DNA of 64,000 nucleotides, taken from the NCBI GenBank assembly GCA_001179505.1, contig CDMY01000219.1, positions 62,001 to 126,000 of the forward strand, in the 5' to 3' direction. This DNA comes from Vitrella brassicaformis CCMP3155 (taxonomy: Eukaryota > Protista > Chromerida). A program made the position numbers and the translations under genes. Positions 15,793 through 21,376 of the stretch are shown here, piece after piece; within the stretch, counting starts at the first letter, position 1; each line of letters opens with the position of its first letter. Below the pieces are notes generated by a model. The model had not been told where the DNA came from. It saw only the letters and a program-made list of their open reading frames with translations, and did no database searches.

Positions 15793-17987
15793 TCACAGCT
15801 GCCCCCCACTGTCCAAGAGCACGTCACCACTCCCACCCCCATCGCCCACCTCTGGTGCTGGCGTTGTCAAGTCCTCTGATCGATCTTCCCATGGACGATG
15901 CCCCCATGGGTACGCCAGCCCAAAGTACCTCTCCAGCACCCGATCAGCCATCTGCAGGCTCCCCTCGGCCCACCCCTGAACGTCACTGTAGGCCTCATTC
16001 ACCAGATAGATCGGCACACCGGCCGAAGCGAACGGGTCGGCTGCCAGGTCGGCCAGGGGAGCCTCGCACGAGCAGCATGATCGTGAGTGGCACTCCGCCG
16101 CGCCCCACCGGTGCCACCCTGCGCCGTGGCCGCGCGTGTCGGGATACCACGAGGACAGGACGGCAAAGGACGGCTTCAGAGACAATGTTTGCTTGTAGAG
16201 GGAAAGCTGAAAGACATCACATCGAGGGGCAATTGTGTTGGGTGATGCAGGGGATGTGTTGGGTTCTGAATCGATGTGGGTACCGATTTGTTTTGCAGCC
16301 CCTCTCGGTGGAAATCAACCACCCTTCTGTGTGCATGGTCTAACAACAGGGCGCATCCCCGTGGCATTTGTCTGTGCGTCATCATTGTGTCTTGGTTTAC
16401 CCAAGAAGAGTTGCCCCTCCGGGGTGTCGTGGTCGATGATGGTGTACGGCGCCCCCCTCTCGCGCTGGAAGCGCCGGAAGAACTGCACACACCACATGCA
16501 TTCATGCATAGACACACAGGTGGATGGGATAGGTGATCGTCTGTTCGCACCCTTGCAGTCTCTCCCGCCTCGTCATGCTCATAGACCGCCAGAAGAAACC
16601 CATAGCACTCCTCTGTGGCGTTGGAGCCACCGCGGCATCTAATATGCCCATCATGGTATCGACCTACACACACACACACACACACAGAGGCATTCACCCA
16701 CCCATCCGTGTCTGTCTGTCTGTCTGTCTGTCTGTCAATGCCGGCGCACCTTTAAGCAGCATGTGTTGGGAGTCCCCCTCCTGGCTGAAGTCGCCTCCCA
16801 CCAGATGCAGTTTGGTCTGCCACCATGCGTCAGAGTAGTAGAGGTACAGCTTCGTCACCGTCTCCCCCTCAAGTGTATGCAGCGCCTTCCACCTCTCGAC
16901 CGTCATCATCGTGGCCGGCAGATCGCTCTCGCGTAGCACCTCCAGCAACGGACGCACCGGCACGTTCAGGACCACGCGGTCCGCCCGCACATGAACGTCA
17001 TTCGCAAAGGAAAGTGTGATGGGGCCCTCCTCTTCGCTAGACACATTCAGCCGAGTGAGCTTGTGTCGCGGGAAGGTCCTGATCCCCAGAGGGACGGTCT
17101 TGTTGACTAGTGTTTCCACCATGACGATCAGGCCGGCGTTGGCCCCATCGCTGTCGACGAGTTTGTAGCGCTGGCAGTCGAGAGGGTTGTAGCACGACAC
17201 ATTGAGACGTAGGGTTTCCTTCAATGCCCACATCGTCGGTGTGTGCGCCGGCCAGATGCGGTAAGCTCCCGGCTCAACCACAAGATCGCGATACTGTCCC
17301 AGGCCTCGCAACGACATGATGCGACCGCTGAACCACACCGCACGCGCGCACACACACGGTTCGTCCGATTGTAATGGCCGACTCTCCGTCTAGCTCACCC
17401 GAGTCTGCTGGTCATCTCGAACATGCAGATGTCTCTGCCAGTGTAGTTGCCTTCCTTGAGCAGCCGCCAGGCCACATACGCCCCGCCAATCCCCGCACCG
17501 ACAATCGCCACCCGACACCCATCTGTGTCGGCCAGGTCCGACGAGGGCAGGTCTGCCGTCTTGCGGGGGCAGTAGGTGGGTCTGTGGGGATAGCTGCAAT
17601 CCTCCTCGTAGCCCAGGGCGGCCAGCAGTGATGCCCTCGAGTACGGGAGGGCCTCATCTGGCCTCACGAAGAGAGAAGGGTGGGACGAGGGGGCATCGCA
17701 AGGGGCAGAGGGCGAGTACAAGTAACGGTTGACGAGAAGGAGCAGGCCGACGACTGCAGCATAGCAGCACGCACAGAGCAGCAGTGCAGAGTGCGGTGAG
17801 TCAGTCGATGCGCGTGGTTTGCTGGCTTACATAATATAGGCAAAGCAGCCAGATGGACCCTCCAATCTAGCCAGGATGGACATTGCCTCTCAAGTGGAGT
17901 GTCTGGCGTGGGCGGGCGTGGTTCATCGTCATCCCTGTCAACAGCGTCCACCGATGCATATGCAGCAGATGAGTCCTGGATCTTCAT
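15793..17987 (-). CDS. Flavin-dependent amine/L-amino-acid oxidase (achacin/aplysianin-like) with an N-terminal membrane anchor
   Basis: FAD-binding RVAIVGAGIGG and E...RLGGRI motifs; C-terminal NEAYSDVQGWAEGSLQMA. Splicing exon 1 (17987-17831) to exon 2 (from 17753) creates the TM segment LAALPILFVGLLLLV. Confidence 0.85.
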
Positions 17988-18182
17988 CTGGAAGTCGCCC
18001 CTGGCAGCCGACGGTGAAGACCTCATCCTTGTAAAAGCTTGTCCCTTCTCTCTGGCGGTAAGTGCGAGCTTGAAAGCGATCATACCCCACCTCCTTCCTC
18101 TCGTTTTGCCTGCTTGAGAGGCATCGTTCTCGAGTGCAGATCTTGAACAGATCTTCCTCGGAAAGCGAAGCAAAAAGCAGAG

Positions 18183-19709
18183 ATGTCCCGCGCCAAACTC
18201 GCTGGCGCCGACCCAGCAGCCATCTTTCTTCGCATCGACGCATTCAAGGGCCAATACGAGTTTCTCAGCAACGACTATCCATCAGAGGTCGTCTTTGACC
18301 GTGTGCCCTTCAAGTCAGCGACCCACGCGATTCTTGCTGTGCGATTCTCGGGCAAGGCGGCGGAGATCTGCGAGTGCGAGACCGCCGCGGAGGCGATGGA
18401 CAGAGTCAAGGATGCTCAGGTGAGTGGTGTGTGCGCTTGATTGACTGATTGATGCCGTGAATGAGTTTGGTGGCTATTTGGTACTGCTGCTGTTGGCTGC
18501 AGGAGAGGGACGACTGGGAGTCCGGTCGGCTCAAGTGGATGGAGCAGATCTTACGCGACAAGTTCAGGCGCTCGGCGGGTATGTAACAGATGAATCAAGG
18601 CAGGCACGCACAAACCAAACCAATCCCATGAGGTTCCTACTGCTCTGTGCACATACGTGTGTTGTGTTGTGTTTCCGTTGATCAGAGTTGCGGACCAAGC
18701 TGAAGGAGACGGGCGGCCGGCTGCTGGTGTGGGCCAACGCCAGCGATGCCTTCTTCGGTGAGGTGGACGGCCGAGGGCAGAACCAGCTGGGGAGGATACT
18801 CATGAGGATCCGCACTGACATCAGAAACGACACCGAGCTCGAGAGTGAGCAGACAACATGCCTGGGAGGGTGGATGAATGTCTGAGGGCCATGTGTTCTC
18901 TGTCAGCATGGCTGGCGCTGTGTCACGACCTGGAGGAGGACAACAATGCGCGGCCGCTGCTGCAGCTGATCGAGACGAAGCCTGACCACGAGAACCCACT
19001 GGGTGCGAACAGACCAGAGATCAGCATGTGTGTTGAATGGATGGATGGATGGATGGGTGGGTGTCCTGCACTGCTGCAGGTGAGCATGCGCTCGACGGAG
19101 AGCCGTACTTCTTTCTGGGCAAGAACCCCGAGACCTGTCAAGTCGTCGCTCTGCACCCCTCCATCTCCCGCACACACGCCCTCATCGCCCTCACAAAGGT
19201 CCGTGAGTGGGTTGTTCGTCACAACGGTTGTCTGTTCTCATCTCTCTGTGCGTGTGCATGGCATGGGTGTCTGTCTATGTGTCGCAGGCGGGTCCCGTCT
19301 TGATGGATCTTAACTCAAAGGCGGGCACCAAGCTGAACGGCGAGCGGCTGCCGCACCACCACGTGGGCTTCCCTCTCAAGACCTCCGACACCATCACTCT
19401 CGGCGCATCCACACGCTCATACCAAGTCAAGGTCAGTCTGCCAGAGAGAGAATGAGAATCAACGAGGTTCTGTCTGTCTGTCAATGTGTGTGTGGTCTGG
19501 CGGGTGTGTCAGGTGGACAGCGGCCGTGTGGTGGCCTATTTGGAATCGCGGCAGAAGGAGCTGCGGCGTGAGGTGCAGATGCTCGACAGGAAGATGCAGG
19601 ACCCACTAGCAGCCGTCAAGGACGAGACCAAACAAGAGGCCACCGTACGCAGACAGACACGAAGCGACAGACAGACAGCCAGACAGACAGACAGACAGGT
19701 GCGCGCTGC

Positions 19710-19745
<36 letters not shown>

Positions 19746-20847
19746 CTTTGTGGGCAATCTGCCCTTCACGACCACCAAGGACGAGATCACGGCCTTCTTC
19801 GAGGAATGCGGACACATCACGGTGGGTGGGTGGGTCACCGACACACAGCCTAAACGGCCTCTGCACTCGTGTGTGCGGTCTCTCTCATCTCAGGAGGTGC
19901 GCTTCCCTCCCCCCCGTGACAAGCCATCCGACGGCACCACCGCTGCACGCGGCATCGCCTTCATCACTTTCGACGTATGCCAGCGGCTGACAAAGCCCTC
20001 CAATAGCAACATGTCAGACAGGTCAAACGCTTCTTTCTGCGTCGGTTTGTGCAGACGCCGCTGGCCGCCAAGCGCGCGACAGGCATGGACGGCAAGCACA
20101 TCGGGGGAGAGGCCGGGCCCGATGGCAAGATGAAAGGCGGCCGGAGAATGAAGGTGCGCTTGTGTGTGTGTGTGTGTGTGTGTGTGTGGACCAATCCACA
20201 GGTGACACATTGCCGTGCTGCTGGCTCGGTCTGCTTTGTCTTGTCTGTCGCTCGTCCAGGTGGACATGTCTGAGGGTCCGCGCCCCTCCAGACAAAGACC
20301 CCCCGACGCCAGGGACACCGACCGCCGCAGAGACAGAGACAGAGACAGAGACGACGGTCGACCTGCTCTGCACAATGGCAGGTGAGTGAGTGAGTGACAC
20401 CGATGGATGGATGGATGACTTGCCCTCCATCCCACACACACTCATCAATCGCACCAGTGTTGCGTATGCCTTATGTTCAGGTCCGTGCGTGACGCTCCAC
20501 GGGGGGACGACCGTGGTCAGCGGCGGGAGCCTCGTGAGGAACCACCACGCAGAGACCATCAGGACAGGCGAGAAGGCGACAGGCGAGACGACCGGCCACC
20601 GCCTCAGCCACGTAAGGAGTCGCGCAGCCGCAGCCGCAGCCCGTTGTTCAAACGACGGGCTGTCCGTGACCGCTCTGAGAGTGCGGGTCGGCAGAGAAGG
20701 CGGGGCGGGGATGAAGTTGACAGTGAGAAGGAGATGCGGCGAGATCGGCCGGGGCGCAAGGGGTCTGTGTCCCGGTCTCGGTCTTCGTCGAGGTCGAGGG
20801 ACAGTCGAAGCCCCAAGAGGGGAGGGGTGGCAAGAGGGGCTGGCTGA
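18183..20847 (+). CDS. Multidomain NADAR (YbiA/DUF1768)-FHA-coiled-coil-RRM-RS protein, 12 exons
   Basis: All junctions are GT-AG and in phase. NADAR: FLSNDYP, DKFRRSAELRTKLKETG, DAFFG, GQNQLGRILMRIR. FHA: LGKN, HPSISRTHA, DLNSKAGTKLNG, LGASTRSY. RRM: IFVGNLPF, RGIAFITF. RD/RS tail: RSRSRSP, SRSRSSSRSR. Confidence 0.88.
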
Positions 20848-21376
20848 CTGACTGACTGTCTGTGGATGGATGCATCGCTGGCCTGCCGTATGTGTGTGTC
20901 TGACGTGTGCGATGGCTGGACGGGACACACAATGGATGACAAGGAGACACAGACAGACACACACGTGAGTTGGACTGGATGAGATGGAGTGGATGGATGG
21001 ATGGATGGATCCATCCATGTCATGTTTCTTGCCTATTTCTTGCCGACACTTGGCAGACGGAAACACGCGACCAGATATATATCCATCATTCTCTCTGTGC
21101 AGTGGTCGTTGAGGGGCTCACAGACAGACCGACACACAGCATGACTGAATCAGACAGTGCGACTCATTGGAATGCATGTGTGTGTGTATGTGTCTGAGAG
21201 TGTGCGGCCGCAACTTGACAACCTGATCAATCAACTGACTGAATCACACAGAGGCTTAATCCATGGGATGAGTCCACTCCACCACGCAGTCACCACGAGA
21301 GAGAGAGAGAGAGAGAGATATGGCAGCCAGGTGAGTCAGCTAGGCAGCCAACCACATTCTCACACCGGCCGGAGCG

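What the first reader, a model, noticed from the sequence alone, without database searches (positions are those of the whole stretch)
18183..20847. NADAR-FHA-RRM-RS fusion: a possible nucleic-acid ADP-ribose sensor built into a splicing-factor-like protein
Seen in sequence: 12 exons join in phase into one ORF carrying NADAR (about 18183-18844), FHA (19080-19431), a coiled coil, an RRM (19744-about 20270) and an RD/RS tail. Established: NADAR/YbiA proteins are N-glycosidases that act on riboflavin-pathway intermediates and reverse guanine ADP-ribosylation of DNA in DarT-NADAR systems. The FHA ends in LGASTRSY, the pattern of the SNIP1/Pml1, NIPP1 and kanadaptin splicing-related FHA group, and RRM+RS is the SR-protein layout. 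Inference: the protein links phospho-Thr signalling and RNA binding to recognition or repair of ADP-ribosylated or damaged nucleic acid, perhaps at the spliceosome. I know of no characterised protein with this architecture, but orthologues may already be annotated in other alveolates.
Basis: partly seen in the sequence, partly recalled or inferred. Interest (0 to 1): 0.75.

Follow-up and report, generated by a model that had tools for sequence, protein, structure and literature searches.

The report
NADAR-FHA-RRM gene with altered active site
This is a real, expressed 12-exon gene of the alga-like alveolate Vitrella brassicaformis that joins an ADP-ribose-enzyme-like domain to a phospho-threonine reader and an RNA-binding domain. 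The same fusion is conserved from Toxoplasma to ciliates and brown algae, but its enzyme-like domain lacks the usual catalytic residue, so it may read a nucleotide mark rather than remove it.

Summary
Twelve GT-AG exons (18183-20847, +) give an open 569-aa product. It is identical to the database protein CEL94448.1 / A0A0G4EG70 of Vitrella brassicaformis and to an ORF from an MMETSP transcriptome, so all domains sit on one mRNA.

Full-length Pfam gives NADAR (residues 24-151), FHA (202-268) and RRM_1 (322-393). A disordered R/D/S/P-rich tail follows.

The architecture is not unique. About 90 protein clusters carry it: dinoflagellates, Amoebophrya, coccidia (including Toxoplasma, probably TGGT1_267600), Babesia, ciliates and brown algae. 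Their tree follows organism phylogeny. I found no functional study.

The last-strand catalytic Glu of NADAR (E125 in P. nicotianae and YbiA) is W120 here, and is never Glu or Asp in 79 family members. The second Glu (E43) is T47. Several ADP-ribose phosphate-binding residues are kept.

The FHA is of the NIPP1/SNIP1/kanadaptin type. The tail is RS-like but fails SR-protein criteria.

Best reading: a nuclear RNA-processing adaptor whose NADAR module binds, or non-canonically cleaves, an ADP-ribose-like ligand. This is inferred, not shown.

The scan holds a first-reader note on this same stretch, plus notes on two other NADAR genes in this genome. It has none on this architecture in other DNA.

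The parts
17722..18182 (+). Intergenic/promoter and 5' leader region between this gene and a divergently transcribed flavin amine oxidase gene
   Evidence: The minus-strand ORFs 17395-17721 and 16694-17353 hit NAD_binding_8 and Amino_oxidase. An in-frame stop lies 12 codons upstream of the ATG at 18183.
18183..18419 (+). Exon 1 (aa 1-79): N-terminal half of the NADAR domain. T47 (18321-18323) sits where canonical NADARs have the Glu of the S-x-E-H motif; R54 (18342-18344) sits where they have Lys
   Evidence: Exon 1 alone gave no Pfam hit but retrieved P0001 and NADAR-FHA-RRM relatives by phmmer.
18503..18578 (+). Exon 2 (aa 80-105): NADAR core helix with W84, R88, E93 and the family-invariant R97-D98-K99-F100-x-R102
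18686..18844 (+). Exon 3 (aa 105-158): C-terminal half of NADAR. W120 (18730-18732) replaces the catalytic last-strand Glu; D125, F128, G135, N137 and R147 are conserved
   Evidence: Pfam NADAR E 1.1e-7 on this exon alone; alignment to YbiA and 8bau; family counts
18907..19002 (+). Exon 4 (aa 158-190): folded connector and N-terminal extension of the FHA sandwich, with the family-invariant W159
   Evidence: pLDDT 96-98, helix 155-163 and strand 175-181; W159 is invariant in 79/79
19080..19431 (+). Exons 5 and 6 (19080-19198, 19288-19431; aa 190-277) with intron 5: FHA domain. G203-K204, S217, S219-R220-x-H222, the S239-K-A-G-T243 loop, and S270-T-R272-x-Y274
   Evidence: Pfam FHA on both exons and on the full length; NIPP1 2jpe E 3.8e-9; profile hits to NIPP1, kanadaptin and TbPar42; Foldseek hits to DDL, kanadaptin and SNIP1; column counts
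19513..19644 (+). Exon 7 (aa 278-321): long alpha-helix linking FHA and RRM
   Evidence: AF2 helices 281-306 and 308-319, pLDDT above 90. PDB alignments to U1-70K/Snp1 extend into this helix.
19744..20271 (+). Exons 8-10 and the first codons of exon 11 (19744-19821, 19894-19974, 20055-20153, 20260-20271; aa 322-411) with their introns: RRM. RNP2 is IFVGNL and RNP1 is RGIAFITF, with a Vitrella-specific insert at 395-405
   Evidence: Pfam RRM_1; conservation of F323, G367, F370 and F373
20272..20847 (+). Rest of exon 11 and exon 12 (to 20381; 20481-20847; aa 412-569) with intron 11: disordered R/D/S/P-rich, RS-like tail and stop codon
   Evidence: pLDDT below 50; R 30%, D+E 20%, S 11%; 16% of residues in RS/SR dipeptides; no Pfam family

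Best explanation
Shown: one expressed 12-exon gene of Vitrella brassicaformis encodes a 569-aa protein. Its parts, in order, are a NADAR (YbiA-fold) domain, a folded connector, an FHA domain of the NIPP1/SNIP1/kanadaptin type, a long helix, an RRM with intact RNP motifs, and a disordered Arg/Asp/Ser-rich tail. It belongs to a vertically inherited family present in myzozoans, ciliates and stramenopiles. Inferred: the protein is a nuclear RNA-processing, probably splicing-associated, adaptor. The RRM and charged tail hold it on RNA or RNP. The FHA docks on phospho-threonine motifs of partner proteins, as NIPP1 and SNIP1 do. The NADAR module keeps its fold and several ADP-ribose phosphate-contacting residues (W84, R88, D125, an aromatic at 128, a basic residue at 54). 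It lacks the catalytic last-strand Glu (W120) and, in alveolates, the second Glu (T47). It therefore most likely acts as a binding (reader) module for an ADP-ribose-like ligand, such as base-ADP-ribosylated RNA or a free NAD-derived nucleotide, and not as a canonical hydrolase.
For: The gene model is open and identical to a database protein and to a transcriptome ORF. Pfam places NADAR, FHA and RRM above their cut-offs. The AF2 model has pLDDT above 90 over residues 20-410 and pTM 0.65, although about 28% of the chain is a disordered tail. Fold matches include YbiA 2b3w (TM 0.72), P. nicotianae NADAR 8bau, DDL, kanadaptin, SNIP1 and Pml1. About 90 clusters share the domain order, and their tree mirrors organism phylogeny. 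Schuller et al. 2023 (PMC11543638) give the residue roles: E43 and E125 hold the distal ribose, the E125-equivalent is required for hydrolysis, and K50, W89, R93, D130 and W133 bind the phosphates. Mapping through the YbiA-8bau alignment and the YbiA-Vitrella alignment gives T47, R54, W84, R88, W120, D125 and F128. In the family, the E125 position is W28 M19 Y14 F6 N5 A3 plus one each of Q, H, K and C, so it is never E or D. The E43 position is Glu in only 20 of 79. W84 is kept in 77 of 79, position 88 is R or K in 58 of 79, and position 125 is D, N or E in 78 of 79. The FHA keeps S219, R220 and H222 in nearly all 79 members, and keeps S-T-R-x-Y. The RNP aromatics are conserved. The probable T. 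gondii orthologue TGGT1_267600 is listed among regulated RNA-processing phosphoproteins.
Against: No localisation, binding or activity data exist for any family member. The strongly conserved pocket fits catalysis as well as binding. Family-specific invariant or near-invariant residues (D98, E93, H48) could supply a relocated catalytic group, but I could not measure their distance to the pocket because the model's coordinates are not returned. In E. coli C7 NADAR, E88A (the E43 equivalent) had only a minor effect in vitro and K95R stayed active, so T47 and R54 alone do not prove inactivity. The FHA has Lys or other residues where canonical FHAs have the phosphate-binding Arg (K204: K45, R6), and Ala where they have Asn, so phospho-Thr binding is not assured. 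The tail fails SR-protein criteria.
Confidence: 0.45

Rival explanations
1. The NADAR module is an active hydrolase. It is guided to RNA by the RRM and tail and removes ADP-ribose from guanosine or cytidine bases. This is the 'eraser/repair' reading, and it would need a non-canonical catalytic residue in place of the last-strand Glu.
For: All NADARs tested so far hydrolyse G-ADPr on DNA and RNA (PMC11125620; PMC11833690) and C-ADPr (PMC12945103). The catalytic residue is known to move or change within the superfamily: Glu in YbiA, Asp two residues upstream in BC4488, His in phage. The family has its own invariant D98 and near-invariant E93 and H48. The pocket residues are under strong constraint.
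Against: None of the 79 members has Glu or Asp at the E125 position, and only one has His. The position two residues upstream, where BC4488 NADARs carry their Asp, is Leu or Ile in all 79. No acidic residue is conserved family-wide in that strand: Vitrella has WANAS, coccidia WLNTG, Babesia YIS. The E43 equivalent is also lost in alveolates.
Confidence: 0.3
2. The NADAR fold has been re-used purely as a structural or protein-interaction domain with no nucleotide ligand. On this reading the protein is simply an FHA-RRM splicing or RNP factor.
For: Catalytic residues are lost. Adenine-side contacts of the P. nicotianae enzyme (G78, Y84, D86) are not kept. NADAR, connector and FHA are modelled with uniformly high confidence, and W159 in the connector is invariant.
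Against: Phosphate-binding positions (W84, R88, D125, aromatic 128, basic 54) and the G-x-N-x-L-G motif stay conserved across very deep divergences. That is not expected if the pocket were unused.
Confidence: 0.17
3. The domain is a metabolic N-glycosidase of the YbiA/COG3236 type, acting on riboflavin-pathway intermediates.
For: This is the activity first described for E. coli YbiA and the plant fusions (cited in PMC11543638). JGI auto-annotation calls some family members 'ribA/ribD-fused uncharacterized protein'.
Against: There is no fusion to riboflavin enzymes. The domain is fused instead to FHA, RRM and an RS-like tail. The YbiA-family Glu is absent.
Confidence: 0.03
4. Gene-model artefact: a NADAR gene and an FHA-RRM gene have been wrongly merged.
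For: If intron 3 were retained, a stop would follow at 18883-18885, giving a NADAR-only product. Isoforms were not examined.
Against: An identical 569-aa ORF comes from a transcriptome assembly. Dozens of transcriptome-derived orthologues marked 'complete' have the same order. Only 235 nt separate exon 3 from exon 5, and exon 4 encodes a confidently folded connector with an invariant Trp.
Confidence: 0.02

Closest known systems
NADAR superfamily: E. coli YbiA (PDB 2b3w) and Phytophthora nicotianae NADAR (PDB 8bau)
   Same: Passes the Pfam NADAR model (66 bits). The fold matches (TM 0.72 to 2b3w, 0.63 to 8bau). It shares the S-x-x-H-A motif, W84, the basic residue at 88, K-F, D-x-aromatic-aromatic-G and G-x-N-x-L-G...R.
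   Different: The last-strand catalytic Glu is Trp and the second Glu is Thr. The G78 and Y84/D86-type contacts are absent. It has family-specific invariants R97-D98 and R102. It is fused to FHA, RRM and a charged tail, where most characterised NADARs are free-standing or fused to metabolic enzymes.
FHA domains of NIPP1 (2jpe), kanadaptin (4h87), SNIP1/DDL/Pml1 (3vpy, 7dvq_X, 2jkd)
   Same: These are the best sequence and fold matches. They share the N-terminal extension, H-P-S-x-S-R-x-H-A and the closing G-x-S-T-R-x-Y. All of them work in nuclear RNA processing or splicing.
   Different: Those proteins carry no NADAR and no RRM in the same chain. Here the canonical Gly-Arg is Gly-Lys and the loop Asn is Ala. 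Orthology to any of them is not shown.
U1-70K (3pgw_S) and RS-like RNA-binding proteins
   Same: The layout is a long helix, then an RRM, then an Arg/Asp/Glu/Ser-rich disordered tail. PDB profile alignments to U1-70K run from the helix into the tail.
   Different: The RRM is not specifically closest to U1-70K: Hrp1 scores higher with the single sequence. The tail match is largely compositional, and the N-terminal two thirds have no counterpart.
DarT1-NADAR (DarTG1) toxin-antitoxin systems
   Same: Same domain superfamily, and a documented link of NADAR to ADP-ribosylated nucleic-acid bases.
   Different: This is a eukaryotic nuclear gene with introns. It has no transferase partner next to it (its neighbour is an amine oxidase). 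It lacks the BC4488-type catalytic Asp and Lys pattern.

Membership tests
NADAR superfamily (Pfam PF08719) | Sequence passes the curated family model | tested here: met
   66.1 bits against a cut-off of 35.1, residues 24-151. Exon 3 alone scores 32.7 bits.
NADAR superfamily (Pfam PF08719) | YbiA fold (helical core flanked by two small sheets) | tested here: met
   AF2 pLDDT above 95 over the domain. Foldseek gives 2b3w TM 0.72 at rmsd 2.2 and 8bau TM 0.63.
YbiA subfamily of NADAR | Conserved Glu in the last strand (E125 of P. nicotianae NADAR and of YbiA), needed for hydrolysis | tested here: not met
   Trp120 in Vitrella; 0 of 79 family members have Glu or Asp there. It should not be filed as a YbiA-type enzyme.
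BC4488 / DarT1-associated NADAR | Catalytic Asp two residues before that position, and an adjacent DarT gene | tested here: not met
   The position is Leu or Ile in 79 of 79. The upstream neighbour is a flavin amine oxidase. This is a eukaryotic spliced gene.
NADAR superfamily | Glu and Lys of the S-x-E-H...K motif (E43 and K50 in P. nicotianae) | tested here: not met
   T47 and R54 in Vitrella. In the family, Glu occurs in 20 of 79 (the stramenopile-type clade only), and position 54 is R37, K24, Q17.
NADAR superfamily | ADP-ribosyl-guanosine hydrolase activity | not testable with these tools
   Needs a biochemical assay.
FHA domain (Pfam PF00498) | Passes the family model and keeps the conserved Ser and His of the phospho-Thr site | tested here: met
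   47.2 bits against a cut-off of 20.7. S219 is kept in 79/79, R220 in 78/79 and H222 in 79/79.
FHA domain (Pfam PF00498) | Canonical Gly-Arg and loop Asn that contact the phosphopeptide (from my knowledge of Rad53 FHA1) | tested here: inconclusive
   G203 is conserved, but position 204 is K45, R6 and others. The loop position 241 is A40, N16, S10. NIPP1, a proven pThr binder, also lacks the Asn (alignment).
NIPP1/SNIP1/kanadaptin FHA subgroup | Closest to these FHAs by sequence and fold, with the closing G-x-S-T-R-x-Y motif | tested here: met
   NIPP1 is the best PDB hit (E 3.8e-9 with the single sequence, 1.2e-25 with the profile), kanadaptin scores 3.8e-22. Foldseek's top hits are DDL, kanadaptin and SNIP1 chains. 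S270 is kept in 75, R272 in 74 and Y274 in 73 of 79.
RRM (Pfam PF00076) | Passes the model, with RNP2 and RNP1 aromatic residues | tested here: met
   48.3 bits. Position 323 is F or Y in 72 of 79, F370 is kept in 78 of 79 and F373 in 68 of 79.
SR proteins (criteria of Manley and Krainer 2010, from my knowledge) | N-terminal RRM(s) followed by an RS domain of at least 50 aa with more than 40% RS content | tested here: not met
   The RRM is internal, after NADAR and FHA. 16% of tail residues lie in RS/SR dipeptides, with 28% in the best 50-aa window. The tail is RS-like only.

The most novel reading that the evidence does not exclude
The family is a dedicated reader, or non-canonical eraser, of an endogenous NAD-derived mark on RNA, such as base ADP-ribosylation or an NAD-type cap. 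It would couple that mark to phospho-threonine signalling in the splicing machinery. Such a pathway would have been present in the common ancestor of alveolates and stramenopiles and would persist in parasites such as Toxoplasma and Babesia.
Probability: 0.15. Interest if true: 0.85.

Novelty: new variant of a known kind. Interest (0 to 1): 0.55.

Why it matters
The physiological roles of eukaryotic NADARs are explicitly described as unknown in the recent literature (PMC11125620). It is also an open question whether eukaryotes have endogenous base ADP-ribosylation of RNA or DNA (PMC12945103). This family ties a NADAR fold permanently to an RNA-binding domain and to a splicing-type phospho-Thr reader. 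It does so across a very old and large part of eukaryotic diversity, including tractable models (Toxoplasma, Tetrahymena). Its altered active site gives a clear, testable choice between reader and eraser. The gene and its domains are already in public databases, so what this work adds is the family definition, its distribution and the active-site change. The architecture itself is not new.

Tried and rejected
- **Exon-wise Pfam.** Exons 1, 2, 4, 9, 10, 11 and 12 gave nothing on their own. Exon 7 gave only a sub-threshold Enkurin hit that I disregard.
- **Joined sequence.** No search was made with a hand-joined sequence. The exons were joined only inside a script, to test that the frame is open and to compare it with P0001. 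All full-length searches used the database protein P0001.
- **PDB profile search.** The search with the whole-family alignment was swamped by RRM hits and did not print a NADAR alignment. I obtained the residue mapping by searching with E. coli YbiA instead.
- **ESM Atlas.** It gave only bacterial and phage NADAR clusters for P0001 and nothing for P0046, so it added no taxonomy.
- **Prior description.** De Souza and Aravind 2012, which defined NADAR, and Aravind et al. 2015 are not held. I could not check whether they already mention this fusion.
- **Literature searches.** Searches for NADAR/DUF1768/YbiA with FHA/RRM found no description of the architecture. A search for TGME49/TGGT1_267600 found one phosphoproteome table only.
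- **Copy number.** My first statement that this is the only NADAR gene of the genome is withdrawn. The exon-wise search is insensitive, a weak second locus appears on contig 526, and earlier scan notes list two other NADAR genes. A macrodomain search did not place one on contig 526.
- **RES-complex idea.** I considered that the FHA-RRM pair is a fused equivalent of the RES complex (Pml1/SNIP1 plus Snu17/RBMX2). No RRM hit pointed to Snu17/RBMX2, so I did not adopt it.
- **Origin.** The window is not human.
Full report
**Gene model.** The region 18183-20847 on the + strand holds 12 exons. All are bounded by GT..AG, with introns of 62-107 nt and matching phases. Together they give 1710 nt, or 569 codons plus a stop, with no internal stop. 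An in-frame stop lies 12 codons upstream of the ATG.

Pfam finds the C-terminal half of NADAR in exon 3 (E 1.1e-7), FHA in exons 5 and 6, and the RNP2 half of RRM_1 in exon 8. No hand-joined sequence was sent to any search. The exons were joined only inside a script, to test openness and identity.

A phmmer search of 1.8 billion representatives with exon 1 alone returned a 569-aa protein, P0001, that is identical to the 12-exon model over its whole length. All later full-length work used P0001.

**Source and expression.** P0001 is CEL94448.1 / UniRef A0A0G4EG70, 'FHA domain-containing protein' of Vitrella brassicaformis CCMP3155. The same exact sequence is also recorded as an ORF of an MMETSP transcriptome assembly. 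The genome size (72.7 Mb, 1064 contigs) fits what I recall for that assembly. The transcriptome ORF is direct support that NADAR, FHA and RRM are on one mRNA and that the junctions are right.

The upstream neighbour is a divergently oriented flavin amine oxidase gene that ends at 17721. The 347-aa antisense ORF at 20023-21066 has no support and lies opposite the repetitive Arg/Asp/Ser-coding exons.

**Domains.**
- Full-length Pfam gives NADAR 24-151 (66.1 bits, cut-off 35.1), FHA 202-268 (47.2 bits) and RRM_1 322-393 (48.3 bits).
- An AlphaFold2 model built on a 79-sequence family alignment has pLDDT above 90 from about residue 20 to 410 and pTM 0.65. That pTM is reached although about 28% of the chain (residues 412-569) is a disordered tail.
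- The stretch between NADAR and FHA (exon 4) is confidently folded and carries a Trp (W159) that is invariant in the family.
- A helix of about 40 residues (281-319) joins FHA to RRM.
- Foldseek matches the NADAR part to E. coli YbiA (2b3w, TM 0.72) and P. nicotianae NADAR (8bau).
- Foldseek matches the FHA part best to Arabidopsis DDL, kanadaptin, SNIP1 in human Bact and pre-Bact spliceosomes, TbPar42, NIPP1 and Pml1.
- By sequence, NIPP1 is the best PDB hit of the single protein (E 3.8e-9). NIPP1, kanadaptin and TbPar42 are the best FHA hits of the family profile.

**A conserved family.** Two word-index searches, with P0001 and with the Besnoitia member, found about 90 clusters carrying PF08719+PF00498+PF00076 in the same order. 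Named members:
- Dinoflagellates: Effrenium, Pyrodinium, Yihiella, Gymnodinium, Durusdinium.
- Syndiniales: Amoebophrya.
- Coccidia: Toxoplasma, Hammondia, Neospora, Besnoitia, Cystoisospora, Cyclospora, Eimeria.
- Other apicomplexans: Babesia, Cardiosporidium, Digyalum.
- Ciliates: Tetrahymena, plus a probable Oxytricha entry.
- Brown algae and relatives: Ectocarpus, Laminaria, Undaria, Nemacystus, Chrysoparadoxa.

A FastTree of 378 core columns splits into a stramenopile-type clade, a ciliate clade and a myzozoan clade, with Vitrella in the last. This is the pattern of vertical descent. I saw no Plasmodium, Theileria or Cryptosporidium member, but the searches scored only the 8000 best word-sharing candidates, so absence is not shown.

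**Probable Toxoplasma orthologue.** The T. gondii GT1 orthologue (P0106, 732 aa) has Ser at positions 406 and 413. [quoted passage not shown] With 6.7% Ser, a chance match is about 0.5%, so this is probably the gene. No functional study of it or of any other member turned up.

**NADAR active site.** Schuller et al. 2023 (PMC11543638) describe the ADP-ribose complex of P. nicotianae NADAR:
- E43 and E125 hold the distal ribose.
- K50, R79, W89, R93, D130 and W133 bind the phosphates.
- Y84 and D86 contact the adenosine.

The residue at the E125 position is required for hydrolysis. It is Glu in YbiA types, Asp two residues upstream in DarT1-linked types, and His in phage types. K50 is essential, although Arg works in vitro. 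E43-to-Ala has only a small effect in vitro.

I mapped these residues through the phmmer alignment of E. coli YbiA to chain 8bau. Chain index minus 2 reproduces every residue number in the paper. I then mapped YbiA to the Vitrella protein. The Vitrella equivalents:

| P. nicotianae | Vitrella |
|---|---|
| E43 | T47 |
| K50 | R54 |
| W89 | W84 |
| R93 | R88 |
| E125 | W120 |
| D130 | D125 |
| W133 | F128 |

Counts over the 79 aligned family members:
- E125 position: W28, M19, Y14, F6, N5, A3, and one each of Q, H, K and C. It is never Glu or Asp.
- Two residues upstream of it: always Leu or Ile.
- No acidic residue is conserved in that strand.
- E43 position: Glu in only 20 of 79, all in the stramenopile-type clade.
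- K50 position: R37, K24, Q17.
- Kept residues: W84 (77/79), R or K at 88 (58/79), D/N/E at 125 (78/79), W or F at 128 (74/79), H48 (72/79), G135, N137 and R147 (79/79).
- Residues that the canonical NADARs I aligned (YbiA, P0004, P0012) do not share: the family-invariant D98, near-invariant R97 and R102, and E93 (73/79).

The pattern is that phosphate-binding residues are kept and ribose-activating acids are lost. That is what one expects of a binding module derived from an enzyme. It does not exclude a relocated catalytic residue. I could not test that, because the structure tool returns no coordinates.

**FHA, RRM and tail.**
- The FHA keeps S219 and H222 in all 79 members, R220 in 78, and the closing S-T-R-x-Y. 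The canonical Gly-Arg is mostly Gly-Lys, and the loop Asn is mostly Ala. Phospho-Thr binding is therefore likely by analogy with NIPP1, but not assured.
- The RRM has good RNP2 (IFVGNL) and RNP1 (RGIAFITF) motifs with conserved aromatics.
- The tail (412-569) is 30% Arg, 20% Asp+Glu and 11% Ser. Only 16% of its residues lie in RS/SR dipeptides, against 25% in RD/RE-type dipeptides. It is RS-like and resembles the U1-70K tail in composition, but the protein is not a canonical SR protein. Similar charged tails occur throughout the family.

**Interpretation.** Shown: a real, expressed, single gene, its domain identities, the FHA subgroup, the wide conservation, and the non-canonical NADAR site. 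Inferred: a nuclear RNA-processing role, phospho-dependent docking through the FHA, and a reader function for the NADAR module (confidence about 0.45).
- The main rival is an RNA-targeted ADP-ribosyl-base hydrolase with an unusual catalytic residue (about 0.3). It is supported by the finding that every NADAR tested so far removes ADP-ribose from G, and from C, in DNA and RNA.
- A purely structural role (about 0.17) is less likely.
- A riboflavin-pathway role and a merged-gene artefact are unlikely.

**Other NADAR genes in this genome.** Earlier notes of this scan list two other NADAR genes here: a NADAR-two-macrodomain gene and a C2-C2-NADAR gene. My exon-wise searches found only this locus and one weak extra hit on contig 526. 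I therefore withdraw the idea that this is the only NADAR of Vitrella. If the macrodomain fusion keeps its catalytic residues, a division of labour between an eraser and this putative reader would be worth testing.

**Novelty.** The gene, its product and its Pfam domains are already in NCBI and UniProt, and JGI auto-annotation of relatives even names all three domains. What appears undescribed in the literature I could search is the family as such, its distribution, and the family-wide loss of the catalytic Glu. I rate it a new variant of a known kind, with interest 0.55.

Noticed in passing
window 15796-17721 (- strand): A divergently transcribed, spliced flavin-containing amine oxidase gene lies upstream. 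ORF 17395-17721 hits the NAD(P)-binding Rossmann model and ORF 16694-17353 hits Amino_oxidase.
   Followed up: partly
window 19037-19062, 19650-19700, 19716-19741, 20156-20187, 20404-20420, 20985-21010: The introns and the 3' flank are rich in short tandem repeats: (GGAT)n, (GACA)n and (GT)n. Introns 7 and 10 each contain a (GT)n run, which in intron 7 ends just before the acceptor.
   Followed up: no
window 20023-21066 (- strand): A 347-aa antisense ORF overlaps exons 10-12 and the 3' flank. It has no family hit or other support and is most likely a by-product of the repetitive Arg/Asp/Ser coding sequence opposite.
   Followed up: no
L004 / L007 = G000:C526:37907-38029 (-): A weak second NADAR-like exon lies elsewhere in the genome (Pfam E 0.009; 41% identity to a canonical NADAR over 42 aa). 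Earlier scan notes list two further NADAR genes in this genome. A Macro-domain search gave no hit on this contig.
   Followed up: partly
P0106 (T. gondii GT1, EPR57284.1): Residues 406 and 413 are both Ser, matching the phosphosites published for TGGT1_267600. This is probably the Toxoplasma orthologue. It changes phosphorylation on SPARK depletion.
   Followed up: partly
P0019 (Effrenium voratum, 833 aa), P0081, P0083, P0010: There are variants of the architecture. The Effrenium model adds an isochorismatase-family domain (PF00857). P0081 adds a CCCH zinc finger (PF18345). P0010 has two RRMs. P0083 (357 aa) is a different fusion, NADAR plus a cytidylyltransferase-like domain.
   Followed up: no
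window 18845-18906 (intron 3): If intron 3 were retained, the frame would stop at 18883-18885 and give a NADAR-only protein of about 170 aa. Whether such an isoform exists is unknown.
   Followed up: no
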